From Anthoceros angustus (taxonomy: Eukaryota; Plantae; Anthocerotophyta): DNA of 64,000 bases. The position numbers and the translations under genes were made by a program. Within the stretch, counting starts at the first letter, position 1. Each line of letters begins with the position of its first letter. Under the pieces are notes generated by a model. That model worked only from the letters and a program-made list of their open reading frames with translations, was not told the DNA's origin and did no database searches. This document shows positions 12,480 to 47,297 of this stretch, piece after piece. The stretch spans positions 496,001 through 560,000 of the forward strand of contig MU008170.1 of assembly GCA_010909165.1 (NCBI GenBank), in the 5' to 3' direction.

Positions 12480-14440
12480 GCTTGACTATGAATGAGTGGC
12501 ACCCCATTCGAGTACTGATCCGTCGCTTGACCATGGAGTTCTATGGACCCTTGTCCTATGAATGAGTGGCACCCCATTTGAGTATGATCGGTTGCTTGAA
12601 TATGGAGTTCCAAGGACGCTTGACTATGAATAGGAGGACTGATCCGTCCTAAGGACACTTGACTATGAATGGGTCGACTGATCCATCCTAAGGACGCTTG
12701 ACTATGGGAGGACTAATCCGTCCTAAGGACACTTGACTATGAATGGGACGACTAATCTGTCTTAAGGACGCTTGACTATGGGAGGACTAATCCGTCCTAA
12801 GGACACTTGACTATGAATGGGACGATTGATCCGTCCTAAGGATACTTGACTATGGGAGGACTAATCCGTCCTAAGGACACTTGACTATGAACGGGACGAC
12901 TTATCCGTCCTAAGGACGCTTAACTATGGGAGGACTAATCCGTCCTAAGGACACTTGACTATGAATGGGAAGACTGATCCGTCCTAAGGACGCTTGACTA
13001 TGAATGGGTGGCACCCCCCCTAAGGATGCTTGACTATGAATGGGTGGCACCCCCCTACGGGATGACTGATCCGTCCTAAGGACGCTTGACTATGAATGGG
13101 TGGCACCCCCCTAAGGACGCTTGACTATGAATGGGAGGACTGATCCATCCTAAGGACGCTTGACTATGAATGGGAGGACTGATCCATCCTAAGGATGCTT
13201 GACTATGAATGGGAGGACTGATCCATCCTAAGGATGCTTGACTATGAATGGGTGGCACCCCATTCGAGTACTGATCCATCGCTTGACTGTGGAGTTCCAG
13301 GGATCCTTGACTATGAATGGGTGGCACCCTATTCGAGTATTAATCTGTTGCTTGACTGTGGAGTTCCAAGGATGCTTGACTATGAATGGGTGGCACCCCA
13401 TTCGAGTACTGATCCGTCGCTTGACTATGGAGTTCCAAGGATGCTTGACTGTGAATGGGTGGCACCCTATTTGAGTATTAATTTGTCTATGGAGTTCCAA
13501 GGATGCTTGACTATGAATGGGTGGCACCCTATTCAAGTATTAATCTGTCGCTTGACTGTGGAGTTCCAATGAATGGGTGGCACCCCATTCGAGTATTAAC
13601 CTGTCGCTTGATTTTGGAGTTCCCATGAATGGGGCTTGACTGTGGAGTTCCAAAGATGCTTGACTATGAATGGATGGCACCCTATTCGAATATTAATTTG
13701 TCTATGGAGTTCCAAGGATGCTTGACTCTGAATGGGTGGCACCAAAGATGCTTGACTATGAATGGATGGCACCCTATTCGAATATTAATTTGTCTATGGA
13801 GTTCCAAGGATGCTTGACTCTGAATGGGTGGCACCCTATTCGAGTATTAATCTGTCGCTTGACTGTGCAGTTCCAATGAATGGGTGGCACCCCATTCGAG
13901 TATTAACCTGTTGCTTGATTTTGGAGTTCCCATGAATGGGGCTTGACTGTGGAGTTCCAAGGATGCTTGACTATGAATGGATGGCACCCTATTCGAATAT
14001 TAATTTGTCTATGGAGTTCCAAGGATGCTTGACTCTGAATGGGTGGCACCAAAGATGCTTGACTATGAATGGATGGCACCCTATTCGAATATTAATTTGT
14101 CTATGGAGTTCCAAGGATGCTTGACTCAATGGGTGGCACCCTATTCGAGTATTAACTGCCGCTTGATCGTGGAGTTCAATGAATGGGTGGCACCCCATTC
14201 GAGTATTAACCTGTTGCTTGATTTTGGAGTTCCCATGAATGGGGCTTGACTGTGGAGTTCCAAGGATGCTTGACTATGAATGGATGGCACCCTATTCGAA
14301 TATTAATGGATGGCACCCTATTCGAATATTAATCTGTCGCTTGACTGTGGAGTTCCAATGAATGGGTGGCACCCCATTCGAGTATTAACGTTGACTGTGG
14401 AGTTCCAATGAATCGGTGGCACCCCATTCGAGTATTAACG
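12480..14440 (+). repeat. Tandem array of related 35/39-bp and 69-bp units with higher-order structure
   Basis: Shared core GCTTGACTATGAATGGG. 35/39-bp units at about 12620-13230 and 69-bp units at about 13230-14440; 307-bp block duplication (13629 vs 13936). Confidence 0.9.
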
Positions 14441-16109
14441 GTGTTTGAGATACCCTGAGTGGAGCTCTGTGGAAAGGACCGATGGGTTGCCAGTCTGGAA
14501 CTTGAGTTGCAGAGTGGTACACGCCTAGGTCGTGCGGTTCCGCCAGACCCAACATGACGGAGCCCATTCAAGCGATAAGTTGTGGAGTCCCAACGTGACG
14601 GAGCCCATTCAAGCGATAAGTTGTGGAGTTTAGGCAGAATAAGCACGAGTTCATTCCCTGTAGAACGAACCCCAGTACTACATCGACATTGGGTTATAAG
14701 TGTGCACTCGGCTAGTCCTCTAGCAAAAGTTGCCCCACAAACTTGCATGACTTAATCGGCACAATTACATGTAATTATTGATATAGGTCGTATGGTGGAA
14801 GGTTGAACCAATGATACCAAACAATTCAATTCCGTTCATGAACACGGAAAGAGGAAGCTGGAAATATGTATCACCGCCAGAAGGTAAGAATAAGTTTATA
14901 TGGAGCTCAAGCACCCACCTTTGATGCCGAAGGCTAGATTCCATCGGGTCTTCTTGGTGCTATTACATAACATAGTAATCACAAAGCTTTCATTTCAAAA
15001 GCCATATTTTGAGAGATTTATCAGTTTTTTTCATAGAATATATATGTATATAAATATATATACATATATATATATCAATTACAAAGTATGTATAAGCCGG
15101 TAGTAAGTAGGCCTTTTCAAATACCTGACCACGAAGTTCTTCGAGCGGTTGGTAATTTTGAAATGCGTGATCGTAGGGGCTAGTCCCCTGGCATGGTGCC
15201 CTTCGTTGGGTTTTTTCCCCTTTGTTTAAGGGGTGGATGGGATTTTCCATCTCTTTTTTATAATAAAGTCTTCTTTTCCGCTATAAGGAATGATGTTTCA
15301 ATAGGTTTCTAACCATCCCATTTGTAGCGGGGGCTAAATCCTTGCTATTGCCACCTTAAGAATAGTGGGACTTCATCTTTTTTGGTTGGATTGAGAGACA
15401 TATTATGAAGTATTTCTTATCTCAAAAGCTGAGCAATTGAGTATTTTTGGGTTCACTCACTTATCCCTCACTCTAGCATTTACTTCTATCTCAACTCTAG
15501 AGCTGACTGGATCCTTAACTCTAGAACTTGGAATGAGGTATATGAAGGTTATTATGTTTGATTATTTTAAAAGATGTTGTTCTATTGTCAAAGGACTTGC
15601 CAATTGAGTATCTTTTGGCTGGCTGACTAATCCTGACGCTAGATTAGTGGATGAGGTATATTATTTAAAGATCCCTCTGCTTGGTTAATTCAAGAGGTCT
15701 TGTTTGTTGTAAGATGGCTCTCCACTAAATGCAAGTTTTTGATAATCGGAACAAAAAATGAAAGATATTGTAATATAAAGAGATTTTCTAGTTTTTATTG
15801 ACGCTCTATTGATTCCATAAAGTATCGAGTAATATTTTCTAGACTCTTGCTCATATGCTGGTATATGTGGGAGCTGCGAGCAGGCCGTGAGTTGTGTTTT
15901 GTTTAAATCGGATGTGTCTATGTCACTTGCACGGAACCTGAACCGGTCCGCTTCAGCGCTGGAGCAGCTTGAGCCGCGTCCAACGGTCTGAATTCTGCGT
16001 GGACCTCTGTACAGTTCCTATCCTTGCTTTGCAAATTGCGGGGAAGCATTGGAGGGGAAGAAGAATGGTCCAACCTGCTTTCTCTCACGATCGCCGGACT
16101 GGTGTGCAA

Positions 16110-17672: not shown

Positions 17673-20453
17673 TTAGCGATGATCACCACAAGAACAATAT
17701 CCATCCCTGAAGTGATGAACACGGTGTGCATCTCGGACTATGATCTCTCGGCCTTCGATCCTGGAGATGATCTTCGTCCCACTATGACAGTTATCACACA
17801 TTCGAAGATTTTTGGTGACGAGAAGAGTAGAGCCTGCAGCTGTGTTCAGCAGGCCAAAAGCCAAGGCGAGCTTTTCAGCATGCCCACATAAGGCATCTTC
17901 TTTCTCCTCCTCGGACAGGGGCTTTAAGACTTGGGCTGTATGCGGCACATGGCCTTCTTCCTTCATCTGTCCGTTGAGACTCCTTATCTTGTGAGATATG
18001 TCATTTGTCTGGTCACCCACGATGAACTCGTGCACCTTCTTCTCTACTTCGATTGTGGCTGCTGCAGGTTTCTTGAAGGCACGAGTCTGTATTCTCATTT
18101 GCTCTATGCTGTTGACATCCTCCCAGCGTCCAGCACTGGCATAGATACTTGACATCAGCACATAGACAGCAGAGTGTTGGGGTTCTATCTCCAGGAGCTG
18201 ATTGAAGCATATCCTTCCTCGTTCCAAGTCACAGTGAGATTTGCAGGCGCTGAGCAGAGACATCCACACTGCACCTGACGGTTGAAAGGGCATGCTATGC
18301 AGGAGACTCTGTGCCTCATCCAGGTGCCCTGACCGACCAAGAAGATCTACCATGGAGGTGTAGTGTTCTATTCCTGGTGGGAAACCCTCATCTTCCATCA
18401 TTTTGAAATACTGTTGACCTTCATTCACTCGACCAACATGACTGCAGGCAACAAGGAGACAAGTAAATGTGGCAGCATCTGGTTCTACTCCATAACGTTT
18501 CATCTCCTTGAAACATTGGATTGCGCTTTCACAGTCATTATGTTGGCCATAAGCATTGATAAGTGAGGTCCAAGTCACAACGTCTTTGGTTGGAAATCTG
18601 TCAAACAGCCTCTCAGCTTCGACAAGGTTCCCACATTTTGCATACATATCGACCAGTGTGCTGGCAACAAAAGCATTGGATTCCATTCCCCCTTCCAGGA
18701 TCTTAGCATGAACTTGCTTGCCAGTTTGTATGGCTCCTACACTTCCACATGCTTTTAGAACACTAACAAAAGTGAGATTGTCTGGCGTCATCCCATGCTG
18801 CTGCATACTTGCAAACAGATTGAGGGCCTCCCGTCCAAGTCCACGCTGGGCATACCCTTCAACCATAGCAGTCCATGTAATCACATTCTTGATAGACAAG
18901 CTGTCAAAGACTTCGCGGGCATCATCGACGCTTCCACACATTACATAAGTGTCCACTAGTGTGCTCCCTACAAACACATCTGCATCATAGCCACGTTTCA
19001 AGATTTGTGTATGAATCTGCTTGCACAATTGCAGATCTTTCCTCCTGCCACAGGCTTTTAGAATGTTAACAAATGTAACACTGTTTGCTCTTATGCCCCA
19101 TCCACACATTCTTGAATAAAGATCAAGGGCCAATGTATCAAACCCGTGCTGACAGTATCCCACGAGCATTGAATTCCAAGTTGCCAAATCTCTGGCTGGC
19201 AATCCATCGAGCACTCTGCGAGCCTCATCTAATTTCCCACATCTTGCATACATGTCCACCAAGGCACTTCCAACAACTGCATCGTCCAGACCACCTTCCA
19301 GGATTTGGGCATGAATATGCTTGCCCATCTCTACCTCACCCATGCTACCACATACTTTCAAAATGCTCACATACGTTCCAGTGTCTGCTGAGATGCTGTG
19401 CTGCTGCATAGTCCCATAAAGTTGTATAGCTTCTTCATTGAATCCGTTCTGAGCATATCCCACAATCATGGCAGTCCAGGCAGCCACGTTCTTTGCAGGT
19501 AGATTGTCAAACACTACACGTGAATCCTCCAGGCTACCACACTTTGCATACATGTCCACCATGCTGCTTCCTAGAAAAGCATCTGTGTCGAGTCCCTGCT
19601 CCAGAAACTGGGCATGTATCTGCTTGCCGCTGTAAAGGTCACCAATGCTGCCACATGCTTTAAGGACGTTCACATATGAAAGACTGTCTGGGTTTATGCC
19701 ATCCTGTGACAGCATCATGTAAAGTTCCAAGGCTTCCAGGCCAAGGCCATTCTGAGCATAGGCTCCAATCATGGTATTCCACGTGACTATGTTTCTGCTC
19801 GACATCCTGTCAAACACAGCACGAGCATCTTCCAGGCTCCCAAATTTTGAGTACATGTCCACAAGTGTGCTTCCGACAAATACATTCAACTCCAGCCCAC
19901 TGTCCACAACATCGGCATGCACCAGCTTGCCTGCTGCGATATCAGCTGCACTGATACAAGCTTTAACAATAGCCACGTAAAGATACTCATTTGGTTGGGT
20001 CGTCGATTGTCTCATCTCCTGGTAGAACTTGATAGCTTGTTCAGGTTGCCCATATTCACCACACCCTGAGATGATGGCAGTCCATACAAACACATCGGGT
20101 GCAGGCAGTTTCCGGAACACTTCATTTGCTTCAAGAAGCTTCCCTTGAGAAGCATACATGCGTATAAGGTGATTTCCCAGAAAATTGTTGAACTCATATC
20201 CACATCTCACAGAAAGAGAATGAACTTGCCTGCCAACCACTAGGTCCCCTTTCAAAATGCAGCCCCTCAATATCCTGTACAACATAGCTCGGGTGACAAA
20301 CTCTCCTTGTCGGAACATGTGTTCCAGGGCCTGGAAAGCCTGGTCAAGCTCTCTGTCCCTGCCAAACTCTGTCCAATCCTGGCACTTACCAGAACCGTCG
20401 AAATGTAACACCCTGTAGGGTCCAGGAAACACGACGTCAGTACTATGATTCAA
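17673..20453 (-). CDS. PLS-class PPR protein with E1/E2 and a DYW:KP (KPAxA) deaminase-like domain; candidate organellar (U-to-C) RNA editing factor
   Basis: About 20 PPR motifs (L-S-P triplets, then P2-L2-S2), E1, E2, then KKPAAATIEV, HAEKLALAFGL, RMCDNCH and CSCGDHR. The ORF call starts at TTG with an in-frame TGA 7 codons upstream; the first ATG is at 20318, so the true 5' end is uncertain. Confidence 0.95.
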   Translation of the reverse strand: MNHSTDVVFPGPYRVLHFDGSGKCQDWTEFGRDRELDQAFQALEHMFRQGEFVTRAMLYRILRGCILKGDLVVGRQVHSLSVRCGYEFNNFLGNHLIRMYASQGKLLEANEVFRKLPAPDVFVWTAIISGCGEYGQPEQAIKFYQEMRQSTTQPNEYLYVAIVKACISAADIAAGKLVHADVVDSGLELNVFVGSTLVDMYSKFGSLEDARAVFDRMSSRNIVTWNTMIGAYAQNGLGLEALELYMMLSQDGINPDSLSYVNVLKACGSIGDLYSGKQIHAQFLEQGLDTDAFLGSSMVDMYAKCGSLEDSRVVFDNLPAKNVAAWTAMIVGYAQNGFNEEAIQLYGTMQQHSISADTGTYVSILKVCGSMGEVEMGKHIHAQILEGGLDDAVVGSALVDMYARCGKLDEARRVLDGLPARDLATWNSMLVGYCQHGFDTLALDLYSRMCGWGIRANSVTFVNILKACGRRKDLQLCKQIHTQILKRGYDADVFVGSTLVDTYVMCGSVDDAREVFDSLSIKNVITWTAMVEGYAQRGLGREALNLFASMQQHGMTPDNLTFVSVLKACGSVGAIQTGKQVHAKILEGGMESNAFVASTLVDMYAKCGNLVEAERLFDRFPTKDVVTWTSLINAYGQHNDCESAIQCFKEMKRYGVEPDAATFTCLLVACSHVGRVNEGQQYFKMMEDEGFPPGIEHYTSMVDLLGRSGHLDEAQSLLHSMPFQPSGAVWMSLLSACKSHCDLERGRICFNQLLEIEPQHSAVYVLMSSIYASAGRWEDVNSIEQMRIQTRAFKKPAAATIEVEKKVHEFIVGDQTNDISHKIRSLNGQMKEEGHVPHTAQVLKPLSEEEKEDALCGHAEKLALAFGLLNTAAGSTLLVTKNLRMCDNCHSGTKIISRIEGREIIVRDAHRVHHFRDGYCSCGDHR

Positions 20454-25705: not shown

Positions 25706-25843
<138 letters not shown>

Positions 25844-27202
25844 TTTGAAGGGGGTAGGGGTGTTCGATCTTGCTTTTTAATTTGAAATAATAATATGTAG
25901 TTTGAAGAGGTAGGGGCGTTCGGTAGCGTCAATTCCAGGTTAATTTTGTATGTCCGTCATTCCTTAATATGTACATGCGGTCAGCTCAAAAATGGAAAAA
26001 CTGTCGTGAGTGCACCAACAAGCACCTAACATGTATTTGTGCACTCAGGATAGTTATGCATCTCAAACAGCTTAATTTTATAAGCGAGGCCCCATTCTAA
26101 GGTTTTAAGGTTTGCAAACTCCTATTTTGGAAACATATTTAGGAGTTCAATAACATCGCCTCTCTGGATCCAACCTAAGATCTTAGAAATAAAAAACACA
26201 TAAAAACCATTGTTTCGATCTGTAAGATTTGCGCCACTTCCTTCTCTTTCAGTGGCTATTGTCAAACATGTCCTCGAAAGCACTAGTCCAGTTAGAGTTC
26301 ACGATGCCCCAGCAACGTGTCTGTATCACGATAGGTGTCTCATGATTAGTTGGACCTACTCGAACTTCACCAACTACATCAATTTCGGTTGCTTGTTCAA
26401 TTTCGTCAACATTGACCAATCCAGCATTTTGGGCCATTTCTTTGTCCAAGAGTTGGTAAGAAACGTCACAACCATCGTTCATCATTCTCACCTAGCCTTG
26501 AAATTGTTGAACTTAGAATAACTTGGTCTTGATAAGCTCACGTGTCCAGACATATAAAGTGCTCTTCTGGGTCACTGCAAACCCATACGCTAAAATGTTT
26601 TTGTCTGAAATTAGGAGCCGATCAAGGTGCTTAAGGTTTATGCAGGGCAACATGGTGGGCAAGCAATGTTTCTTGTTTTGGTTGTATCTAGCAAGATAAA
26701 TGAGCAATAAAAGCAAAAACATACTTAAAAAACACAAATCATTAATCATTGCATGAATTAAACCAAGAGCTAACTCTAGTCCCAACTAAATCACAACAAA
26801 AGTATGAAGAATGGCCGACTAAATAGTCATTAGTCTCTATGCATAGATCATCAAGACATACTTGATCTCCAGCATACCATACTTACTTAATCTCCAACAC
26901 ACTATACTTGTGCAAAAATACACGATAAGAATGTTTTCGTAAACTTGATGAGATTAAAACATGATCATCGCATGCAACAAACTTAAAGAAGCACCATTGC
27001 TTTCATGAAAATCTTGAATATGAACTAATTATTATTTTATTTCATATTTAATAGGTTATTAAGCTTCAAATTGGAATGAAAAGTGATGTTGTTCTTGAAA
27101 TATTGAAAGACTCAACAACATCGCTTCTACACTGAATCCCACAATGAAAAAGTGGGGTTAAGAAAACCTCTCATGGAGAGACCAGTTCAGATTATTTCTC
27201 AA

Positions 27203-27646
27203 CTATCGTGGTGCTAGACAAACTTGGGGTGGAGGTGAATCTATAGAGTATTGCAAATCACAATGATCTCGTCTATATGATGCAGATCGCCTACTGATGC
27301 AATAGTGGTCTAAAAGTTCAACCTCAGCAATTTGTAGGCACAACTTACATAGCTCTTTTATTCGCTCATCTATGGGATCAGCAAAGTAACATGTAACTCT
27401 TCCACTAAAAAAAAATGGAAAAGTTAATATCAAATAATATGGAGATACTTTCGGATAATTCTCTCCTCCGCTTGTAACAAGTGTAGATACCCCAGATCTC
27501 ACAACGTCAATAGCATTATCAAAAGGCCATATTATTTCACCACATCTATACGCAACCCCTGGTCCAAATTCAAATGGTTGTGTCTTTACAAAAACCAATA
27601 CGGTTTGTAATATTAGATATATTTTTAATAGATAAATACATTTCAT
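27203..27646 (-). CDS. Small secreted Cys-rich protein, single Gnk2/DUF26-like domain (paralog 2)
   Basis: 147-aa intronless ORF with a signal-peptide-like N-terminus and C-X13-CKLC...ELLDHYC..RRS....CDLQYSIDS. Shares YRCG, VVRxGVS, PY, ELLDxYC and RRS with 1017-1463. Confidence 0.7.
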   Translation of the reverse strand: MKCIYLLKIYLILQTVLVFVKTQPFEFGPGVAYRCGEIIWPFDNAIDVVRSGVSTLVTSGGENYPKVSPYYLILTFPFFFSGRVTCYFADPIDERIKELCKLCLQIAEVELLDHYCISRRSASYRRDHCDLQYSIDSPPPQVCLAPR

Positions 27647-27741
27647 TCTATATGCTACTGAATGACACCAAATTTCTGAATTTTTGAGTTGAACAAATTT
27701 CAGGATGTGAAATCCTTAGTGCATTGTATATTTATTTTGAT

Positions 27742-27794
<53 letters not shown>

Positions 27795-28345
27795 TGTATG
27801 GAATGTTAGGTCAATATAAAGTGATTTAATATTATTATGTACAGCTCATAAAAGTTATCACAGTTTATTTGGTCACCAATATATTTTTTGAAAATATCGC
27901 TTAGTTACTTGTCGCTTTTTGGGTTGTTCCTCCTCACACTTCAGGAGTAGATGGGATTTTCCATCTCGTGTATTAATAACGTCTACTCTATTCTATCTTG
28001 TCAAGTATGTTTTGTGTCAAGTCTTTGAAATAGACTATCTTTAAGGAGTTCAAAATCTCATATACCCAATTAACTCTAAGCAACACAACTATATGTGAAA
28101 TGGAATTAATATAATGGCATGTCATCCTCTAGAAAAAAGCTCCTATACACCAACAGGAAATGGTTTATAATCGATGTCCTTGTGCAGCGGATTATGGAGA
28201 ACCTATAACATTTTTAATGTCTCATGTTTTTTGTGGTAATTTATGTTTTTCTCGAATACTCATGGAGAAACCATTTTATATTCTGTTGTATAATTTAAGG
28301 ACTCCTCATCTAAATTACGTAGGAGCCAGCGGTTTTGATGAAAAT

Positions 28346-29675
28346 CTTGAATATGAACAGGACAAGCCTGCCTCACCTGTCAGGCATCAGGGTGCGCTTG
28401 TGGCCAAGGAATCTGCGATGTCCTTGCACAGCTCGAGCCATGTTGCCGTCATAGGTGGGAACGAAGACGTCGCTGGCCACAGCCACCATGTAGTCCAGGG
28501 CTGCCATGCGGTTCTGATAATCCTTGAAGGGACTAAGCTCCTCTGGCGAGGCCAAGGTTTCTTTGGTAACCACCTTGGGAAGAAGGAGGTGAATCTATAG
28601 AGTATTGCAAATCACAATGATCTCGCCTATATGATTAACTATTTGTAAAAATATTCATACTATGAATATATATAACTAGACTCAGAGAAGGGTACCCGTG
28701 ATGGTTTTTACATTAGATGATTTTCATGAGGAAGAAATATTGACAACGGTAAAGGTTTTATATGGGATATTTTATGATAAAAATACTGACAACACTGCGG
28801 TGCTGGGGACCGTCAAGTGATCATTTTAGCGACGCTCAGTACTCTTGTTAGAAAGAACTTTGTTTTCTTACTGGCTATACGAAACAGGCCAAAAGAATTA
28901 AGTACAAATATAACTCATCCCTGTAAGCAGACACCCCTGCAACAAGGGCACCCATAGTGGACTAAGGAACATCAAGACTTCCTCGCATCCCTCAAATTTC
29001 GACTCTTGCTCCTCCGGAGGCCGGATGTACAATTGCGGAGCTTAGATAGGAGGAATGCAACCAGGCTCTCCTTCACGGGATTTATTGCAAACAATGACCT
29101 ATACAATGTCGAAACGGGATGCAATGGGAAAATGTTAGGTCAATATAAAGTGATTTAATATTATTATGTACAGCTCATAAAAGTTATCACAGTTTATTTG
29201 GTCACCAATATATTTTTTGAAAATATCGCTTAGTTACTTGTCGCTTTTTGGGTTGTTCCTCCTCACACTTCAGGAGTAGATGGGATTTTCCATCTCGTGT
29301 ATTAATAACGTCTACTCTATTCTATCTTGTCAAGTATGTTTTGTGTCAAGTCTTTGAAATAGACTATCTTTAAGGAGTTCAAAATCTCATATACCCAATT
29401 AACTCTAAGCAACACAACTATATGTGAAATGGAATTAATATAATGGCATGTCATCCTCTAGAAAAAAGCTCCTATACACCAACAGGAAATGGTTTATAAT
29501 CGATGTCCTTGTGCAGCGGATTATGGAGAACCTATAACATTTTTAATGTCTCATGTTTTTTGTGGTAATTTATGTTTTTCTCGAATACTCATGGAGAAAC
29601 CATTTTATATTCTGTTGTATAATTTAAGGACTCCTCATCTAAATTACGTAGGAGCCAGCGGTTTTTGATGAAAAT
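28346..29675 (+). other. Composite templated insertion built from local fragments
   Basis: Successive matches to 27005-27025, 31147-31391, 27231-27281, 30191-30710 and 27802-28345, each junction sharing 8-9 nt of exact microhomology. Confidence 0.9.
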
Positions 29676-30836
29676 TAATTAATTATAGCTAGTATTAAAA
29701 TTTTAAAAAATATTGAAATGAGTGGCCGAAAACTAAAAAATGCAAAATGGTAAAGTGCCAAAAACATGCTGGTGTGTACACACCTCGATTGTAAGGAGTG
29801 GGAGAATGCACACCCTGGTGAGAGGAGGGGGAGAGCGCACACCTCCGCCAGGATCCAAGCTCCCGATTGCACATCGAGATTGGATTCAATCCTTCGAGGG
29901 GTTCAATTTCTGTGCAAATATGAGCAAGTCTCAAAAGCCATGGTGTTAACAAGGTAAATAGATAAAATAAATCATAATATTTATCCACTATCTTTTGTGA
30001 GGTATACAAGTTGAAACTTCTTTTTTCAAATGACTACTTAGTTGACATTAGGCAGTCCAAAACCGATGGATCTCGTAATAGATGAGACGTGATACTTTTT
30101 TGAACAGGAGCTGAAACTTATGAATTCCACATATTATCCTCCTCAATTATTTGAATACGATCGTTTGTCTAAATTTATGACTTAAATATGCTATATGATT
30201 AACTATTTGTAAAAATATTCATACTATGAATATATATAACTAGACTCAGAGAAGGGTACCCGTGATGGTTTTTACATTAGATGATTTTCATGAGGAAGAA
30301 ATATTGACAACGGTAAAGGTTTTTATATGGGATATTTTTATGATAAAAAAATACTGACAACACTGCGGTGCTGGGGACCGTCAAGTGATCATTTTAGCGA
30401 CGCTCAGTACTCTTGTTAGAAAGAACTTTGTTTTCTTACTGGCTATACGAAACAGGCCAAAAAGAATTAAGTACAAATATAACTCATCCCTGTAAGCAGA
30501 CACCCCCTGCAACAAGGGCACCCATAGTGGACTAAGGAACATCAAGACTTCCTCGCATCCCTCAAATTTCGACTCTTGCTCCTCCGGAGGCCGGATGTAC
30601 AATTGCGGAGCTTAGATAGGGAGGAATGCAACCAGGCTCTCCTTCACGGGATTTATTGCAAACAATGACCTATACAATGTCGAAACGGGATGCAATGGGA
30701 AAATGTTAGGCCATGGATCCCAGCCATGGGTGATTGGTACACCACTGCCCTTGTTGTTCAGAAAGGGATCAAAGAATTTTTTATTGGGCTAAAACAATGA
30801 ATGAATACCTACACAGGATAGGGGAAGAGAGGTCGG

Positions 30837-33800
30837 CTATCGTTGTCTCAGCTTGTGCTGCACAGCAGGAGAGGGAGCCCGGCACAAGCACTCAGTTGGG
30901 TTAGCATAGAAATTCTCTTCCTGCTTCACTCTGGATGGAGACAAAGGCTTCCTGTCATGGTGCGATCCTTGCCTACTCCTGTGTGTCCTCTGTACCTGCT
31001 TCTTCAGTGAGATCCAATCCAGATCCCCACTGGTATAGGCATCCAAGAGCTTCACGAGCTCAACCCTGGAGACAAAAAGCCCCTAAGAATTCAGTCTGTT
31101 TGAAACTTACACTGGAAAACGCAAGCAACTATCTGTGGGCTTGTGCAATATGAACGGGACAAGCCTGCCTCACCTGTCAGGCATCAGGGTGCGCTTGTGG
31201 CCAAGGAATCTGCGATGTCCTTGCACAGCTCGAGCCATGTTGCCGTCATAGGTGGGAACGAAGACGTCGCTGGCCACAGCCACCATGTAGTCCAGGGCTG
31301 CCATGCGGTTCTGATAATCCTTGAAGGGACTAAGCTCCTCTGGCGAGGCCAAGGTTTCTTTGGTAACCACCTTGGGGAAGAAGGAGGTGAAGGACTTCAT
31401 CCGCTGCTCACCGCCGTAGATCTGGCCTGCAGCGACGTAGATGACGGTCTCCTCCGGGTATCCCATAGCCTTGAGCATGAGCCCAATTTCACGGGGAGTG
31501 AGGGGGCACGAGCCTTCTGCTCGCCTCTGTACTGGGTCGATCTCTTTCTCCTTCCACCGGCTCACATTGTACCGGATCCCTTTTAGCTCTAGGGACTCCC
31601 GATGACTCAACCCGAATGTGCATCCGGAGAAGGCCAGCATGTCTTTCTCGTACCTGCAGCAACGTACGCAGAGGAGATCAGCACCCTCCCACCGGGCAGC
31701 AGGGCGTCATGCAATGCGAGTCATTTACCTCAAGTGCAGTGCGATGAATGGGCCTTGGCTTTTCAGTCTCTTGATGATCTTGTTGGCTAGATCTCGGATC
31801 GCTGGATGGAATGTGAGAGCCCGGTAGTTTGCTCTGCAACGCAAACGCTGGATGTCGCGGTCTATCCGATTGTTTGCAAGTCGGGAGTCTGTAAGCACAA
31901 ACCGGATTACTTGATGCTCCTTCAGCAGCGGCAGAATCTCTTCCTCATAGTAACTTGTCTGCGGCAAGACAGCAGGAAGGAGTGTTAGCTCTGAGTTTTT
32001 CAGCTGTAGCAAGTTGGTAGCAGCTGCAGTTGTGAAAAGAAATGGGAGTTCGGGCTAACCTCAGACCATGAACGAGGAGCAAGCTCAAACACAGTACGAT
32101 TCTGCAAGTGCGGAGGAAGGGCCATGACCACTTTGACATCGTCCTGGAGAGAGGTGATGAAGTGCTCCACGTCAAAGACCTTTCCAAAGTCACTGCAAGA
32201 GGGAGACTGTTCATTGACATGCGCACAAAGCGTGAACCGCCGAATACATGCCTTCTTTGGATAAAGCTCTGCCCCCTTTCATACCTTGGGTCCGCCCAGT
32301 AGGAAGTATGATCTAGTTCCGGAATGACCAGGGTGGCATTCAAGACTCGGGCCACAGCCACCATGTCACAAATCTGGCACATAGAGTTACTGCAAAAATG
32401 AGAAAAAAAATTGAACGAATAACACTTCCAGGCCTCATCACAGACTCAGATGTACGTGCTCGTACCCCAGTGCGCATTTGATTGAGTCCTCCATTTGCAA
32501 ACATCAGAATGTATCCATTGGTCGTATCCGTAGCTCCTGCCCGAGAGGGAGGCAGAGTTAAGAAGCCAATAAAGGGACTAGAATCACACCCAAGGAGATG
32601 AGCAAATTGTGCGTGAAAGGTGCAGGAAGCCTTACTTTGGTAATGGTCCGCAGGCTTTACACATTGCTTCAATTTGCCGGAGCTCAGGGGCTTTGCCCAA
32701 GGATATAGATCTCCCCAGTTTGACTGATGAAGATAATCAGGTAAGGTGATGGAATTGGGAAAGCCTTCGAAAAAAAAAAAAACAAGCCAAGGTCCAGCGA
32801 GGACGGAAGGTCCACAAAGCATACCTGATCAATAGCTGAAGTATCCACACCTGGAAGGCCTTGTTCTTTATCTCCCACCCTTCTGACCACATCAGAGGCT
32901 AGAAAAGAAGAATCGCTTCTTTCCTCAGACGCTAAGTCTACTGACTGGGTTACCCAGCTTTTCAATTGCTTGCGGTCGCTGCGCACCTGCCCATCAAGAA
33001 CAGGAATGGGTGGTCCAGTGTCACTAGCCTGAAACTGTGTGAGCTCCTGTCCAGTTTGACTAGATTGGGCCACACTTTGTGAATGAGAAGATAGTTGGTG
33101 GAAACTGTGACCATCCTCCGGCCTGGAGGCAACTCTCGACCTGGAGACTTCATTGTTGGCTATCTGTTTGAGGGGCGTGGGAAGAGCCTTCCAATACTGT
33201 CCTAAAACACCTGAATCTGTCAAGGAATCTTCTCTCAAAACATTTATTGGCATATCCGAGACAACTGATTGCACTTGTCCCAACGTTGGCACCTGCAATG
33301 TCCATCAGAGTGTGTTCGTGTGAAGTCCATTAGCTTGTGTTCAAAGACATAGATGACTATTTCAATTGCTATGTTGCTGAACTGAAATCATGCGACTCCT
33401 AGACTGGGTTGCTTTGGAGGACCAGGTCAGGGTGGAGTTTAGGCAGGGAATTCAGACCTACAAGCATTTGCTTAAGCAGATGCGGACAAAGTTGATTCAA
33501 CGAAGTTCCTAAAACTGGGTACTTTAACGCAAGAAGATCTTCAGGCGTAGGTAAGGGTTCGTTTGGAACAGACACAGGAAGAGAGAAGCAAGAAGAAGAA
33601 GAGCCTCCCAGAGAAGCCAAACAAAAGAGGAGCGACACATACACACGGAAGGGAGGCAGCAAAAAAGATACAACAATGAGAGCAAGAACACACCTTGAGA
33701 GGATTGATGAGGACACCGAACCCCCCTGTCACAATCTGCAGAAGAAGAAACATGGAGACCAACCCACTGATGCAGCAAGTGGCCAAAACTCTGGTCTTGC

Positions 33801-34084
33801 GTACAGCCTGGTCCGCGGAATGCAGTCTTCTCTGAGGCCCCATTCCACAGCCCCCAACATCCACTACACCCACGTCCAGGGATTCGTTCCTGTTAATCCC
33901 TGCGGGCGACGGAGCTGCTCCAGCAACGGACGGCCTGTCCAGCTTCTCGAACTTGCTGTCCTGTCTCAGAATTGCAGACGAATTCACCGAGTTCTTTATC
34001 TCCAGGTGCACCTGCAGATCATTCATAGCCCCGCGCATGGAACTGACCCGTCGGAGGCCTTTCCACAACAGTCATGGCCACCAT
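30837..34084 (-). CDS. Plant O-fucosyltransferase family protein (GT106/DUF246), multi-exon, with apparent indel errors in exon 1
   Basis: Motifs [122 protein letters not shown] and [13 protein letters not shown]; TAG at 30837. Confidence 0.92.
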
Positions 34085-34872
34085 CGATCCCGGCATCCAC
34101 TTCCTCAAGCGCAGTCGGAATTCCTTCCTACCTCTTTCCTTCCTTCCTTCCTTCAGCAGGCCAGCGCAATTCGAAAACTTCTTTCCTTCCTTTTTTTCAG
34201 CGCGGCAGCGCAATTCGAAAATCCATGGCTCTAAACCGCTCGCTCTACACCACACAATCTGCTGCCAGAAACGTCACAACCTGCTACCAAAAACGTCAAG
34301 AAGGACTTTCCTTCCCCGATGCCCTAATAGCTCGCCTGCCTATCACAAGGGGGATCGTTCACCCTGGGATCTGCCTCGCTGCTTCCTACTCTCTTCCGGA
34401 TCTACATACCGGGACGAAACACAGAATCCGAAAGCCGCATTGTGACCTCCCGCAAACGGCCACACCCCGACCCGCTCAAGGCATCCCTGCGCCCATGCTT
34501 GCGCCCACATCCATAGTCCTGCTACTCTTTCTCAATCTCCTTATTGAGCCATGAGTCCACCGAGAAGGAAGAAGCGGACGCCTGGTCCCCGAGGCCAACA
34601 TACTCCATTTCTCGTCCATAAGTAGCCAACCACCCAGGATCGGAAACCCCCAATACCGGGCTCAGCTGCACATAAGAGACGGAATCTGCATTGCGCTGCT
34701 GCGGGTGATCGCCGAATTGAGACCCCCGAACTCGACCAATCTACGCCACCTGCACATCATCCAGGCACCAGGTCCTCGGCATTGCAGCAATGCAGCAGCG
34801 GGAAGCAGGGGGCGGAATTCCGGGCGATCCGGGCCGGGGGCTGGTGGCCGCAAGACAACCAATCCCAGAACC

Positions 34873-36528
34873 ACACCTGAATCTGTCAAGGAATCTTCTC
34901 TCAAAACATTTATTGGCATATCCGAGACAACTGATTGCACTTGTCCCAACGTTGGCACCTGCAATGTCCATCAGAGTGTGTTCGTGTGAAGTCCATTAGC
35001 TTGTGTTCAAAGACATAGATGACTATTTCAATTGCTATGTTGCTGAACTGAAATCATGCGACCCTAGACTGGGTTGCTTTGGAGGACCAGGTCAGGTGGA
35101 GGCAGGAATTCAGACCTACAAGCATTTGCTTAAGCAGATGCGGACAAAGTTGATTCAACGAAGTTCCTAAAACTGGGTACTTTAACGCAAGAAGATCTTC
35201 AGGCGTAGGTAAGGGTTCGTTTGGAACAGACACAGGAAGAGAGAAGCAAGAAGAAGAAGAGCCTCCCAGAGAAGCCAAACAAAAGAGGAGCGACACATAC
35301 ACACGGAAGGGAGGCAGCAAAAGATACAACAATGAGAGCAAGAACACACCTTGAGAGGATTGATGAGGACACCGAACCCCTGTCACAATCTGCAGAAGAA
35401 GAAACATGGAGACCAACCCACTGATGCAGCAAGTGGCCAAAACTCTGGTCTTGCGTACAGCCTGGTCCGCGGAATGCAGTCTTCTCTGAGGCCCCATTCC
35501 ACAGCCCCCAACATCCACTACACCCACGTCCAGGATTCGTTCCTGTTAATCCCTGCGGGCGACGGAGCTGCTCCAGCAACGGACGGCCTGTCCAGCTTCT
35601 CGAACTTGCTGTCCTGTCTCAGAATTGCAGACGAATTCACCGAGTTCTTTATCTCCAGGTGCACCTGCAGATCATTCATAGCCCCGCGCATGGAACTGAC
35701 CCGTCGGAGAGGCCTTTCCACAACAGTCATGGCCACCATCGATCCCGGCATCCACTTCCTCAAGCGCAGTCGGAATTCCTTCCTACCTCTTTCCTTCCTT
35801 CCTTCCTTCAGCAGGCCAGCGCAATTCGAAAACTTCTTTCCTTCCTTTTTTTCAGCGCGGCAGCGCAATTCGAAAATCCATGGCTCTAAACCGCTCGCTC
35901 TACACCACACAATCTGCTGCCAGAAACGTCACAACCTGCTACCAAAACGTCAAGAAGGACTTTCCTTCCTGATGCCCTAATAGCTCGCCTGCCTATCACA
36001 AGGGGATCGTTCACCCTGGGATCTGCCTCGCTGCTTCCTACTCTCTTCCGGATCTACATACCGGGACGAAACACAGAATCCGAAAGCCGCATTGTGACCT
36101 CCCGCAAACGGCCACACCCGACCCGCTCAAGGCATCCCTGCGCCCATGCTTGCGCCCACATCCATAGTCCTGCTACTCTTTCTCAATCTCCTTATTGAGC
36201 CATGAGTCCACCGAGAAGGAAGAAGCGGACGCCTGGTCCCCGAGGCCAACATACTCCATTTCTCGTCCATAAGTAGCCAACCACCCAGGATCGGAAACCC
36301 CCAATACCGGGCTCAGCTGCACATAAGAGACGGAATCTGCATTGCGCTGCTGCGGGTGATCGCCGAATTGAGACCCCCGAACTCGACCAATCTACGCCAC
36401 CTGCACATCATCCAGGCACCAGGTCCTCGGCATTGCAGCAATGCAGCAGCGGGAAGCAGGGGGCGGAATTCCGGGCGATCCGGGCCGGGGGGGCTGGTGG
36501 CCGCAAGACAACCAATCCCAGAACCACA
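34873..36528 (-). repeat. Tandem duplicate (~1.67 kb) of 33207-34875, containing the O-fucosyltransferase 5' exons and leader
   Basis: Near-identical to 33207-34875, differing mainly by 1-3 nt indels; possibly an assembly artefact. Confidence 0.85.
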
Positions 36529-41631: not shown

Positions 41632-42344
41632 GGCAGCTGATGCTTGTGAAATACACTCCTGAGTCCTCAAGAAAAAACACTACTGTCAGAAAAATGGCAT
41701 GTCTATAATTCGTGCATCTTACTGTCAACCCAAACTGGAAAACCATGAGAACCATCGTCAGTTCTAAGACGCCTAAAACACTCAGCAACTTGGAGAATAC
41801 GGTTTGTGATGCAAGACTAATACAGGGACTCATACTTCCTTTGGCGACGATCAGAGTAAGCTGTCAAAAGACCGTCCAGTGAAATTGTCACCTAAGCGTT
41901 AAGCAGCATGGGATCAACAGCTGTGCAATTCCTGAAGTCCTTCACTCCTTGACGAGAAACACAGCAAGATGCGACAAGCTCTCTACAACAGCCAAAATAT
42001 CTGGGTATCTATCAGAGTGCAGCAGAAAGAATCGCGAAGCATACAGAAGAAAACTTACACACTTCAAGCTTGTGCCGTCGAAATATACTTTGAGGAGGCT
42101 GCGAGCGACGGACGCTGTCAAGTCCCTGAGATAGAGAACCACCGTCACCCTGACGATGCATCGGTCTCTCAGGCAGCAGGGAGCAGGGAATCCCGGAAGC
42201 CTGAAGTACAGATTAGGTCGAACAGGGAAAAGACGAGAAGCCTGGAGGAAAGTAAATTTTTTTCATTTGCGGCTAACGCGGTGATCTGTGATTTTTGCAT
42301 CCAGGAATGCGTGATCGCGGGAGGAAGGGCAAGGCGAGGTTCCA

Positions 42345-43249
42345 GCTGCTGCAGCAATGAAGGCCCTGGCGAGAGTGCACCCAGGCGCATCCACAGCCGT
42401 GGCTGTGGCTCTGCAATCAGCCATCCAGCCCTCTGCATCGCGGTCCCGCCTCATGCTTTCGGCATGTGCTTCTTTGCCTTCATCTGCGGTGGCCTCTTCC
42501 TCCTCTCCTCTCAGCTCCAGCTTCTGCACAGGATTTTGCCTTTCGAGACATGGCAGGATGGGATTTTTGTGTGCTGGTAGCACGGTAGACGGGGAGAGGA
42601 ACTTGACGGGCAGTTCGGTGAGACTGACTGAGAGCTCCTTCTCGGCTGCCAGACGGAGTGCCAGTGCGTCGTCGGAGCTGCTTCCTGTGGTGTCTGAGAA
42701 GGAGGATGTTCAGGTGGCAGAGCAATCGGGTTCCTCAGCTGTCTCGGGATCGGAAGAGGAGGCAGGGAGTGGAAGGCCTTCTTGGCGTGCCAGCATTGAT
42801 TTCAGGTGGATGCGGGAGAAGCAGGATGAGATTGCGGAGAATATACGGAACAGGAAGTCCGGGGAACGTGGAGCTCGTGGTGCAGCTTTACGAGCAGTTT
42901 TGCAGCCTGAACCTGGAGGCGGACAGGCTGCGAGCGGAGAGGAATGCCGTAGCGAAGATGATGAAGGGCAAGCTTGATGCTGCCAAGAGGGAGGAGCTTA
43001 TTGAGCAAGGGAAGGAGCTGAAGGATCAGCTGGCCGGGCTGGAATCCGAGCTTGCGGTTCTGGAAGATGGTTTGCAGCGGGAGGGGCAGCGGATTCCGAA
43101 CATGACGCACCCGAGTGTGCCTGTGGGATCTGAGGATGTAGCTGTTGAGAGGAAGGTGGTAGGGAGTCCGAGAGAGTTCAACTTTGCAGTCCGGGATCAT
43201 GTGGATCTGGGGCTGGCTCTCGATCTGTTCGACTTTGAAGCTGCTGCAG
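42345..43249 (+). pseudogene. 5'-half tandem duplicate of the seryl-tRNA synthetase gene (truncated, frameshifted)
   Basis: 895-bp unit nearly identical to 43240-44145; ATG at 42357; ends at DLFDFEAAA and joins copy 2 through GCTGCYGCAG. Confidence 0.8.
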
Positions 43250-43251
43250 CA

Positions 43252-44999
43252 ATGAAGGCCCTGGCGAGAGTGCACCAGGCGCATCCACAGCCGTGGCTGT
43301 GGCTCTGCAATCAGCCATCCAGCCCTCTGCATCGCGGTCCCGCCTCATGCTTTCGGCATGTGCTTTGCCTTCATCTGCGGTGGCCTCTTCCTCCTCTCCT
43401 CTCAGCTCCAGCTTCTGCACAGGATTTTGCCTTTCGAGACATGGCAGGATGGGATTTTTGTGTGCTGGTAGCACGGTAGACGGGGAGAGGAACTTGACGG
43501 GCAGTTCGGTGAGACTGACTGAGAGCTCCTTCTCGGCTGCCAGACGGAGTGCCAGTGCGTCGTCGGAGCTGCTTCCTGTGGTGTCTGAGAAGGAGGATGT
43601 TCAGGTGGCAGAGCAATCGGGTTCCTCAGCTGTCTCGGGATCGGAAGAGGAGGCAGGGAGTGCGGGAAGGCCTTCTTGGCGTGCCAGCATTGATTTCAGG
43701 TGGATGCGGGAGAAGCAGGATGAGATTGCGGAGAATATACGGAACAGGAAGTCCGGGGGGAACGTGGAGCTCGTGGTGCAGCTTTACGAGCAGTTTTGCA
43801 GCCTGAACCTGGAGGCGGACAGGCTGCGAGCGGAGAGGAATGCCGTAGCGAAGATGATGAAGGGCAAGCTTGATGCTGCCAAGAGGGAGGAGCTTATTGA
43901 GCAAGGGAAGGAGCTGAAGGATCAGCTGGCCGGGCTGGAATCCGAGCTTGCGGTTCTGGAAGATGGTTTGCAGCGGGAGGGGCAGCGGATTCCGAACATG
44001 ACGCACCCGAGTGTGCCTGTGGGATCTGAGGATGTAGCTGTTGAGAGGAAGGTGGTAGGGAGTCCGAGAGAGTTCAACTTTGCAGTCCGGGATCATGTGG
44101 ATCTGGGGCTGGCTCTCGATCTGTTCGACTTTGAAGCTGCCGCAGTGGTGAGTGGCAACAAATTCTACTATCTTAAGAACGAGGCAGTGTTATTGGAGAT
44201 GGCACTCATCAACTGGACACTGTCGCAGCTTCAGGCCAAGGGTTTTGTGCTCCTCACAACACCGGATCTTGTCAGGTCTAGCGTGCTGGAGAAATGCGGG
44301 TTTCAGCCTCGAGGTGCTAACACTCAGGTTTACTCTGTGGAAGGCACGGATCTGTGCCTGACAGGGACGGCAGAGGTTCCTCTAGGCGGGCTATACATGG
44401 ACAAGATACTGCCCGAGTCTGCTCTGCCTGTGAAGCTGGTTGCATTTTCTCACTGCTTCCGGACAGAGGCAGGAGCTGCTGGTGCTGCCACTAGGGGTCT
44501 CTACCGAGTGCACCAGTTCAGCAAGGTGGAAATGTTTGCACTTTGCAGACCAGATGAGAGCAATGCCCTTCATGAGGAGCTGATTACCATCGAAGAAGAA
44601 CTCTTCACCTCGCTGGGCCTGCATTTCAAGATTTTGGACATGTCCACTGAGGACCTAGGAGCTCCTGCCCACAGAAAATTCGACGTGGAGGCTTGGATGC
44701 CTGGACTTGGTCGGTATGGTGAGATCTCCAGTGCATCTAACTGCACCGACTATCAGAGCCGACGGTTGAACATCCGGTTCAGGCCCGAGTCGTCTGCAGC
44801 TCCTAAATCGCCAGCGAAACCCAAACTGCCATCTCCCCAATTTGTACACACTCTGAATGCCACTGCCTGCGCTATCCCGAGGATGATGGTAGCCATTTTT
44901 GAGAACTTCCAACAAGAGGACGGCTCGGTGGCAATACCCGAGGTGTTAAGGCCTTTCATGGGAGGCCTAGCGGCCATCTCTCCTAAAGGTAAAAGATAA
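43252..44999 (+). CDS. SerRS: Organellar (plastid/mitochondrial-type) seryl-tRNA synthetase, intronless
   Basis: Coiled-coil arm, [78 protein letters not shown] and [12 protein letters not shown]; Ser/Ala-rich transit-like N-terminus. Starting at ATG 43252 requires restoring one C (GTGCACCAGG here vs GTGCACCCAGG in copy 1). Confidence 0.95.
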
Positions 45000-46535: not shown

Positions 46536-47297
46536 TTGTTCCTACCCGGACACCATGCAGCGCCGCAGCTCCAAGAACAGAGGCTTGTTTACAAGACAGA
46601 CTATCTCGGGTCCATCCAACCTTCCTCTCCAAGGCCTTCTGAAGTGCGAAAACCTAACCACCCAGAGCAAGCTCCGGCCAGCATCCTCCAGGACCGAACA
46701 TGATCCCAGTAGCTGTGCCCCTCAAGAGTACAACTTTGTGGTTGGACATAACAGAGTGCAGGCAAAGCCGCATCGGCGTGGTTCCAACACACTGGACAAC
46801 ATCATGCGGCAAAAATACTGTGAGCGCACAGACAACGCATGAACACTTATCACCCTCAACTTCGCAGCACAGGCAAGGCCATTCTCACTTCGAGACGCTG
46901 GCGCAGCGGAGCTCGATTCTCTGCTCTGCGCATGAGCCAAAAGCGCTCAAGAATGAGGAGCCCGTGAAAGAGCTGTTGAAGCTACGGCACGCGGAGCTCG
47001 CCAATTCAAAATCTAAACTTTGTCCTTTACAGGAGGGAAATTCTCGGGTGAATGTTCCTTTTATCTTTAACAATGTATTTCATGTCTAAAAGAAAAAATA
47101 TTCAAACACTCATAGATTTTAAAAAATGACCGTCACCGAACTTTGTGGGCGCAGAAGCTTCTAGAGATCCCATATTTCTGCCTACAAGACATGGGGCAAG
47201 ACATGGAGACATGGGGCTGAGCGTGAAGGAAGTCAGGGACTTCGGCGGATGTTGACAACCCTTGAAGACGAAACAAGTGTCCACGATGTGGGCTCGC

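What the first reader, a model, noticed from the sequence alone, without database searches (positions are those of the whole stretch)
27005..31391. Five-step microhomology-chained templated insertion (MMBIR/FoSTeS-like mosaic)
Seen in sequence: 28346-29675 is an in-order patchwork of nearby templates, all in the same orientation. Sequence ending ATGAAAAT (28338-45) switches to 27005-27025; via AATATGAAC to O-fucosyltransferase 31147-31391; via GGAGGTGAA to the DUF26 gene 27231-27281; via CTATATGAT to 30191-30710; via AATGTTAGG back to 27802, re-copying about 545 bp before resuming at 29676. All five junctions carry exact 8-9 nt microhomology, and all donors lie within 4.4 kb. Established: serial microhomology template switching is the signature of MMBIR/FoSTeS and Pol theta templated insertions. 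Inference: this is one complex replication/repair event that shuffles exon pieces of two unrelated genes. An amplification chimera is the main alternative.
Basis: partly seen in the sequence, partly recalled or inferred. Interest (0 to 1): 0.85.

Follow-up and report, generated by a model that had tools for sequence, protein, structure and literature searches.

The report
Patchwork insertion, probably a sequencing artefact
A 1.33-kb insertion stitched from five nearby pieces really is in this sequence, but its error pattern suggests it came from a chimeric DNA molecule in the long-read library that ended up in the assembly, not from a rearrangement in the plant.

Summary
Window 28346-29675 is a same-orientation chain of copies of 27005-27025, 31147-31391, 27231-27281, 30191-30710 and 27802-28345. 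The joins are exact microhomologies of 8, 9, 9, 9 and 9 nt, and those 9-mers occur nowhere else in the 64 kb.

The in vivo MMBIR/FoSTeS reading is not favoured. The copy differs from its donors mainly by homopolymer shortenings that depend on run length: 5 of 7 runs of 5 nt or more, against 1 of 31 three-nt runs. That pattern is long-read consensus error, not polymerase mutagenesis. Four of the differences lie 1-16 bp from junctions, where accurate reads spanning a real junction should have corrected them. The donors look polished.

The window also holds at least four plain head-to-tail duplications and two noisier repeat pairs with the same indel-dominated differences. One of them splits the seryl-tRNA synthetase gene so that neither copy reads from ATG to stop, while a one-copy model gives 582-583 aa. 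Genuinely old repeats in the window differ mostly by substitutions.

First-stage notes on other contigs of this genome had already flagged similar back-jump duplications and fold-back palindromes. I did not check those.

Best reading, at about 0.7: a template-switch chimera present only in the long-read library, of the whole-genome-amplification type, that was kept in the assembly. No reads or independent assembly could be reached, so this stays an inference.

The parts
27802..28345 (.). A1: first copy of the 544-bp segment that is repeated after the filler. Its last 12 bp hold a shortened T-run (T4 at 28333 against T5 at 29662).
28338..28345 (.). Junction 1 microhomology ATGAAAAT (8 nt exact, 12 nt with one mismatch), shared with 27005-27012.
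28346..28358 (.). Segment 1: 13 newly copied bases matching 27013-27025. Its last 9 nt (28350-28358, AATATGAAC) are the junction 2 microhomology with 31147-31155.
28359..28593 (.). Segment 2: copy of 31156-31391, which is the 3' end of the last O-fucosyltransferase coding exon (minus strand) plus 3' flank. It has an A/G substitution at 28359 and GGG for the donor's GGGG at 28577, which breaks the reading frame that the donor keeps. The last 9 nt (GGAGGTGAA) are the junction 3 microhomology.
28594..28635 (.). Segment 3: copy of 27240-27281, with a C/T substitution at 28626. The last 9 nt (CTATATGAT) are the junction 4 microhomology.
28636..29139 (.). Segment 4: copy of 30200-30710 (non-coding, downstream of the O-FucT gene). 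Seven bases are deleted in six homopolymer runs and there are no substitutions. The last 9 nt (AATGTTAGG) are the junction 5 microhomology.
29140..29675 (.). A2: re-copy of 27811-28345, running on into the original downstream sequence at 29676.
27005..27025 (.). Donor 1.
27231..27281 (.). Donor 3. It lies inside a 147-aa minus-strand ORF (27203-27646) that has no Pfam match; the 'DUF26' label is not confirmed.
30191..30710 (.). Donor 4. Its homopolymers are full length.
31147..31391 (.). Donor 2, within the O-FucT exon ORF 31170-31640 (minus strand; PF10250).

Best explanation
The mosaic is most likely a technical chimera, not part of the organism's genome.

A DNA polymerase did switch template five times at 8-9-nt annealing sites within about 3 kb of one molecule, with jumps of -1.3, +2.8, -2.8, +1.6 and -1.6 kb. 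That molecule, or a family of copies of it, existed only in the long-read library. The likeliest source is strand-displacement whole-genome amplification, where displaced 3' ends re-prime nearby.

The assembler took the chimeric path. Long-read polishing brought the insert to about 98.6% accuracy. Accurate short reads, which lack these junctions, corrected the true flanks and donors but not the insert.

Shown here: the structure, the microhomologies, the error signature, and the same pattern in neighbouring duplications. Inferred: that accurate-read polishing was used, that reads spanning the junctions are absent, and that amplification was the source.
For: 1. Copy-versus-donor differences depend on run length. 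In segment 4, 5 of 7 donor homopolymers of 5 nt or more are shortened. Across segments 2-4, only 1 of 31 three-nt runs is. Every indel is a deletion in the copy. At 28577/31374 the donor allele keeps the O-FucT reading frame.

2. Four differences (28333, 28359, 28577, 28626) lie 1-16 bp from junctions 1-4. A2 and the donors are clean.

3. The window has further head-to-tail duplications with indel-dominated differences: 33207-34875/34873-36528 (1 mismatch, 15 gap openings), 42344-43249/43239-44145, 45965-47893/47889-49761 and 57775-58983/58972-60181. There are also two noisier repeat pairs. One 150-bp patch shows about 20% deletion-type error.

4. Old repeats in the same window are substitution-dominated: 109 mismatches to 5 gaps, and 36 to 1.

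5. In the duplication inside the seryl-tRNA synthetase gene, neither copy has an ATG-to-stop ORF (206 and 75 aa). A one-copy model, first copy's left part plus second copy's right part, gives 582-583 aa. Across three duplications, deleted alleles are never found within 300 bp of the ends anchored in true flanks, but seven lie within 300 bp of the novel junctions.

6. Overlap length, jump distance under 10 kb, multi-segment chains and event density match published amplification chimeras. This window has about one novel junction per 6-7 kb, against one per 3.4-10.9 kb in the literature.

7. The chain used the longest annealing sites available, as expected if annealing stability alone limits the switch.
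Against: No reads, depth data or independent assembly could be examined. The species is absent from the searchable collections: even the true donor exon ORF gave no exact hit.

All novel junctions in this window are direct, whereas 85-90% of amplification chimeras are inverted. I have to assume that the assembler selects against inverted chimeras inside contigs.

Phi29 polymerase is highly processive, so newly copied stretches of 13 and 42 nt are unusual for it.

About 1.4% error in the insert implies several supporting long reads, which needs a chimera formed early and then amplified many times (a 'jackpot').

Whether the DNA was amplified at all is unknown. Published hornwort assemblies used unamplified nanopore libraries, and I could not show that this window belongs to any of them.

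Substitutions next to breakpoints are also reported for in vivo replicative rearrangements (my own knowledge, not checked here).
Confidence: 0.7

Rival explanations
1. The event is real and happened in vivo. A break at 28345|29676 was repaired by synthesis-dependent strand annealing, or by break-induced or fork-stalling replication, with five microhomology-primed template switches on the sister chromatid. This left a 545-bp tandem duplication with a 785-bp patchwork filler. The homopolymer differences are then polishing failures in two-copy sequence.
For: The structure is a textbook match: all templates in cis within 3 kb, microhomology at every junction, and a tandem duplication flanking the filler. 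Plants are reported to give patchwork templated insertions, and failed strand annealing gives tandem duplications of about 1 kb (PMC8654963). The short 13- and 42-nt stretches suit a low-processivity repair polymerase. The insertion is intergenic and so tolerable.
Against: If the event were real and fixed, donor and copy would have equal long-read support, and junction-spanning accurate reads would exist. The error asymmetry and the errors 1-16 bp from junctions are then unexpected. Shortening of 5 of 7 long homopolymers is orders of magnitude above any polymerase slippage rate (my inference). Polymerase-theta joints use minute microhomology, often 1 bp, not a uniform 8-9 nt. Five or six such young events in 64 kb, one of them disabling both copies of the start of an essential gene, is implausible for a living genome.
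Confidence: 0.2
2. The mosaic is a purely computational artefact. An assembler, read corrector, gap closer or consensus stitcher joined pieces at short shared seeds, or failed to trim overlaps, and no such molecule ever existed.
For: The plain head-to-tail duplications, and an unchecked note of a 'shingled ladder' on another contig, resemble untrimmed overlaps. Error-rich extra copies are the hallmark of homotype false duplications (PMC9516828).
Against: The overlaps of 8-9 nt (3-12 nt in the other duplications) do not match the seed sizes I know for common tools, which are 14-47 nt; this is my own knowledge. In run-length-compressed space the overlaps are 5-9 symbols and not uniform. There are no N gaps in the window. 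The inserted pieces carry long-read-type errors, so they were not pasted in from accurate contigs. Untrimmed overlaps do not explain a non-collinear five-piece chain with 13- and 42-nt pieces.
Confidence: 0.1

Closest known systems
Chimeras from multiple displacement (phi29) whole-genome amplification, direct type, seen in long reads
   Same: They form within one molecule. The junctions show overlap (mostly 5-8 nt, with 12-13-nt hotspots preferred). Jump distances are under 10 kb. Multi-segment reads are common. There is one event per 3.4-10.9 kb. They are absent from the original genome (PMC9984789 and bioRxiv 10.1101/2022.08.13.503872).
   Different: About 90% of such chimeras are inverted, yet every junction in this window is direct. 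The very short copied stretches (13 and 42 nt) are not typical. Use of amplification for this sample is not documented.
Homotype false duplications in genome assemblies (Ko et al. 2022, PMC9516828)
   Same: The extra copy lies next to the true one, carries sequencing-error differences, and creates false or broken gene models (seen here in the seryl-tRNA synthetase gene).
   Different: The described cases usually flank assembly gaps or show depth gaps. Here there are no Ns and depth cannot be checked. A five-piece microhomology chain is not part of that description.
MMBIR / FoSTeS complex rearrangements
   Same: Serial template switches, microhomology at each join, templates nearby in cis, and a net duplication.
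   Different: Those are in vivo events supported by independent reads and inheritance. Here the copy carries technical errors up to the junctions, and the microhomology is uniformly long.
Polymerase-theta end joining on failed strand-annealing intermediates: tandem duplications with patchwork templated insertions (Kamp et al. 2021, PMC8654963)
   Same: A tandem duplication of about 0.5 kb with a patchwork filler at the joint, a pattern reported as especially common in plants.
   Different: Reported microhomology is minute, often 1 bp. To my knowledge the templated stretches are short and come from the immediate flanks. Here the overlaps are 8-9 nt, and stretches of 236 and 511 nt were copied from 1.3-2.8 kb away.

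Membership tests
MMBIR/FoSTeS complex rearrangement (in vivo) | Two or more template switches, each with junction microhomology | tested here: met
   Five junctions with 8, 9, 9, 9 and 9 nt exact.
MMBIR/FoSTeS complex rearrangement (in vivo) | Templates lie nearby in the same genomic region | tested here: met
   All donors lie within 3.06 kb once the insertion is removed.
MMBIR/FoSTeS complex rearrangement (in vivo) | The rearranged allele exists in the organism (independent reads, inheritance) | tested here: inconclusive
   No reads are available. Indirect evidence points against it: long-read-type errors 1-16 bp from junctions, clean donors, and sibling duplications that break a gene. Exact-protein look-ups were uninformative because the species is not in the collection.
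Polymerase-theta patchwork templated insertion with tandem duplication | Minute junction microhomology (about 1-4 nt) | tested here: not met
Polymerase-theta patchwork templated insertion with tandem duplication | A tandem duplication flanks the filler | tested here: met
   27802-28345 and 29131-29675 flank a 785-bp filler.
Whole-genome-amplification (MDA) chimera | Overlap at the junction and an intramolecular jump under 10 kb | tested here: met
   8-9-nt overlaps and jumps of 1.3-2.8 kb.
Whole-genome-amplification (MDA) chimera | Predominantly inverted orientation (about 85-90%) | tested here: not met
   None of the 9 or so novel junctions in this window is inverted. Fold-back palindromes are noted on other contigs, but those notes are unchecked.
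Whole-genome-amplification (MDA) chimera | Absent from unamplified DNA; the sample was amplified | not testable with these tools
   No reads or sample metadata are available. The organism and assembly were not identified.
Homotype false duplication of an assembly | The extra copy carries sequencing-error differences rather than evolutionary divergence | tested here: met
   The shortenings depend on homopolymer run length. Young copies have a mismatch-to-gap ratio of 1 or less, against 20-36 to 1 in old repeats.
Homotype false duplication of an assembly | Low or absent read depth, or an assembly gap between the copies | not testable with these tools
   The window has no Ns. Depth is unavailable.

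The most novel reading that the evidence does not exclude
The mosaic and its sibling duplications are real products of an unusually active in vivo process in a bryophyte (probably hornwort) lineage. In this reading, serial template switching at long (8-12 nt) microhomologies seeds kilobase tandem duplications and patchwork insertions genome-wide and shuffles exon fragments. The error signature would then only reflect polishing failure in two-copy sequence.
Probability: 0.12. Interest if true: 0.7.

Novelty: not a real feature. Interest (0 to 1): 0.15.

Why it matters
As biology it probably does not matter, because the rearrangement is most likely not in the plant.

As quality control it does matter. 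This assembly appears to hold one false junction every 6-7 kb in this window. These create false partial gene copies, such as the O-fucosyltransferase exon fragment. They also break real gene models: the seryl-tRNA synthetase start is split between two damaged copies. Duplication, 'exon shuffling', palindrome or gene-family-expansion findings from this genome should be treated as suspect until they are checked against reads.

If the event were real, it would be a clean natural example of a five-step templated insertion in a non-seed plant. That is a known kind of event.

Tried and rejected
1. Independent evidence from public assemblies. I ran exact-product look-ups of the mosaic-specific ORF (28160-28597) and, as a control, the true donor exon ORF (31173-31640). 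Both were 'not on record'. Protein searches with the PPR-DYW ORF and the seryl-tRNA synthetase ORF found nothing above 51% and 75% identity. The species is therefore absent and the test says nothing either way.

2. Transposon capture (Pack-MULE or Helitron type). No inverted repeats or short target duplications bound the insert, there is no transposase, and all donors are local. Rejected.

3. Retroposition or spliced RNA. The pieces are not bounded by exons, are not collinear, and have no poly(A). Rejected.

4. Error-prone repair synthesis as the source of the copy's differences. Rejected, because the shortenings depend on run length and affect most long homopolymers.

5. Software seeds. The overlaps fit no k-mer size I know of and are not uniform in run-length-compressed space. 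Considered unlikely.

6. The DUF26 annotation. There is no Pfam match, even at E<=10.

7. Naming the assembly from the hornwort genome papers. They show that nanopore-plus-Pilon pipelines were usual, but I could not tie this window to any of them.
Full report
OBSERVATION

The patchwork is real in the sequence. Repeat finding and BLAST of the region against the window, followed by pairwise alignment, give these matches:
- 28334-28358 with 27001-27025, one mismatch.
- 28350-28593 with 31147-31391: an A/G substitution at 28359, and GGG in place of GGGG at 28577.
- 28585-28635 with 27231-27281: a C/T substitution at 28626.
- 28627-29139 with 30191-30710: no substitutions; seven bases deleted in six homopolymer runs, one run losing two.
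- 29131-29675 with 27802-28345: one T-run difference (T4 at 28333, T5 at 29662).

All pieces are in direct orientation, and the original sequence resumes at 29676. The junction overlaps are exact: 8 nt (12 with one mismatch), then 9, 9, 9 and 9 nt. Each 9-mer occurs in the 64 kb only at its two donor ends and in the copy.

Put another way, the structure is a 544/545-bp tandem duplication with a 785-bp patchwork filler at its joint. With the insertion removed, the donors span 3.06 kb and the five jumps are -1332, +2801, -2821, +1589 and -1569 bases.

Pfam confirms the O-fucosyltransferase exon (PF10250, E 8e-39) and its truncated copy (E 6e-16). The 'DUF26' label for the ORF at 27203-27646 is not confirmed, even at E<=10.

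WHAT THE JUNCTIONS SAY

The one-copy locus of 3.3 kb contains 225 direct exact repeat pairs of 7 nt, 59 of 8 nt, and only 23 of 9 nt or more. Inverted pairs are about as frequent. The chain used four 9-mers and one 8-mer, that is, the longest annealing sites available.

That argues for physical annealing of a 3' end followed by polymerase extension. It argues against ligation, plain concatenation, or the software seeds I know of, which are longer. So a polymerase did switch template five times. The open question is whether that happened in the plant or in a tube.

WHAT THE DIFFERENCES BETWEEN COPY AND DONORS SAY

The differences are not random mutations. In segment 4, 5 of the 7 donor homopolymers of 5 nt or more are shortened in the copy, none of the five 4-nt runs, and 1 of 23 three-nt runs. 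In segment 2 the single 4-nt run is shortened and none of seven 3-nt runs. Every indel is a deletion in the copy.

Loss that depends on run length and hits most long runs is the signature of noisy long-read consensus. No polymerase slips at 70% of five-base runs (my inference). Where there is a ground truth, the donor is the correct allele: GGGG at 31374 keeps the O-FucT reading frame through a Pfam-aligned stretch.

The errors are confined to 28333-29049. The re-copied segment A2 and the donors are clean.

Four differences lie 1-16 bp from junctions 1-4. If the mosaic were present in the accurate reads used to polish the rest of the window, reads spanning those unique junctions would have corrected them. 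That the rest is well polished is inferred from two points: uninterrupted 926-aa and 568-aa ORFs, and the asymmetry between donors and copy.

THE NEIGHBOURHOOD

- 33207-34875 / 34873-36528
- 42344-43249 / 43239-44145
- 45965-47893 / 47889-49761
- 57775-58983 / 58972-60181
- noisier pairs at 56595-58234 / 60167-61589 and 51080-51441 / 56219-56584

Their junction overlaps are 3, 11 (one mismatch), 5 and 12 (one mismatch) nt.

Their differences are dominated by indels: 1 mismatch to 15 gap openings, 24 to 45, 19 to 42, and 22 to 32. One 150-bp patch (about 49120-49260) shows roughly 20% deletion-type error between near-identical flanks.

As an internal control, genuinely diverged repeats in the same window are dominated by substitutions: 109 mismatches to 5 gaps, and 36 to 1.

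A READING-FRAME TEST

The duplication at 42344-44145 lies in the single-exon organellar seryl-tRNA synthetase gene.

As assembled, the ORF from the first copy's ATG stops after 206 aa, because of a shortened G-run at 42861. The ORF from the second copy's ATG stops after 75 aa, because of a shortened C-run 36 bp past the novel junction.

A one-copy model that takes the first copy's left part and the second copy's right part reads 582-583 aa from ATG to stop, for any switch point between 42400 and 42860.

This is what a false duplication predicts. The ends anchored in true flanking sequence get polished, and the sequence next to the non-existent junction does not. Across three duplications, no deleted allele lies within 300 bp of an anchored end, while seven lie within 300 bp of the novel junction. 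The fourth, dupC, contains a transposon integrase fragment and is messier.

MOST LIKELY MECHANISM

The mosaic existed in molecules of the long-read library but not in the accurate-read data. At about 1.4% error the insert is of long-read-consensus quality, so several reads probably shared it.

A chimera formed early during strand-displacement whole-genome amplification and then copied many times would give exactly that. Published properties of such chimeras fit:
- They form within one molecule.
- Jumps are under 10 kb.
- Overlaps are mostly 5-8 nt, with a preference for 12-13-nt hotspots.
- Long reads carry one event per 3.4-10.9 kb.
- Reads with five adjacent discontinuous segments are described.
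- 99.9% are absent from the source genome.

Points that do not fit: about 90% of such chimeras are inverted while all junctions here are direct, and the 13- and 42-nt copied stretches are short for phi29. I assume inverted chimeras are removed or end contigs during assembly. First-stage notes on other contigs of this genome report fold-back palindromes, a 'shingled' back-jump ladder and microhomology jumps. Those are unchecked leads, not evidence.

Whether the DNA was amplified is unknown. The organism looks like a bryophyte, perhaps a hornwort. This rests on seryl-tRNA synthetase identities of 70-75% to mosses and liverworts and an unchecked note of a DYW:KP-type editing factor. It could not be named. 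Published hornwort assemblies used nanopore backbones (miniasm, wtdbg or MaSuRCA) with Pilon polishing. That is the kind of pipeline my argument assumes, but I cannot tie the window to them.

RIVALS

A real in vivo event, meaning strand annealing or replication with template switches, or polymerase-theta joining on a failed intermediate, matches the architecture. It is reported to give patchwork insertions in plants and tandem duplications of about 1 kb.

It does not explain four things:
- the error asymmetry between copy and donors;
- the errors right at the junctions;
- the uniformly long microhomology;
- the density of sibling events, one of which damages both copies of an essential gene's start.

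I give it about 0.2.

A purely computational origin gets about 0.1. The pieces carry long-read errors and are joined at overlaps unlike any seed size I know of, but I cannot exclude it without reads.

VERDICT

Observation confirmed. Interpretation partly supported: template switching yes, in vivo event probably not. Either way this is a known kind of thing.

The practical message is that this assembly carries frequent false junctions that fabricate and break gene models. The decisive tests are junction k-mer counts and donor depth in the accurate reads, raw long-read inspection, sample-preparation records, and a PCR across 27700-29750 (0.72 kb without the insertion, 2.05 kb with it). None could be run here.

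Noticed in passing
window 42344-44145 (gene to 44999): A head-to-tail duplication covers the 5' 0.9 kb of a single-exon organellar seryl-tRNA synthetase gene. Frameshifts at 42861 and 43275 leave neither copy with an ATG-to-stop ORF, while a one-copy model reads 582-583 aa. Any gene model annotated here is probably wrong.
   Followed up: yes
window 33207-36528: A 1.67-kb head-to-tail duplication with a 3-nt junction overlap. The copies differ by 1 substitution and 13 indel events, mostly homopolymer shortenings in the second copy. It starts just upstream of the O-fucosyltransferase gene region.
   Followed up: partly
window 45965-49761: A 1.9-kb head-to-tail duplication carrying an FHA-domain ORF (PF00498) and a weak integrase-core fragment. 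The second copy has a patch of about 150 bp (about 49120-49260) with roughly 20% deletion-type differences, like uncorrected long-read sequence.
   Followed up: partly
window 56219-61589: A chain of noisy re-copies. 57775-58983 is repeated at 58972-60181 (99.8%). Then 56595-57153 and 57381-58234 are re-copied at 60167-60722 and 60731-61589 at 95% and 90% identity, with gaps outnumbering mismatches. 51080-51441 reappears at 56219-56584 (83%, 32 gap openings). It looks like a back-jump ladder.
   Followed up: partly
window 17673-20453 (minus strand): An uninterrupted 926-aa PPR-DYW ORF. The best database relatives are only about 51% identical. It shows that unique parts of the window are free of frameshifts.
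   Followed up: partly
window 25706-25822 and 27744-27794: Perfect trinucleotide microsatellites (ATT/AAT type), in opposite orientation, 2 kb apart. The second ends 7 bp before the start of the duplicated segment A1.
   Followed up: no
window 10900-14450, 2890-3520, 6230-7090: Arrays of diverged tandem repeats (73-91% identity, both substitutions and indels). They look like genuine satellite or coding-repeat sequence, unlike the young duplications.
   Followed up: no
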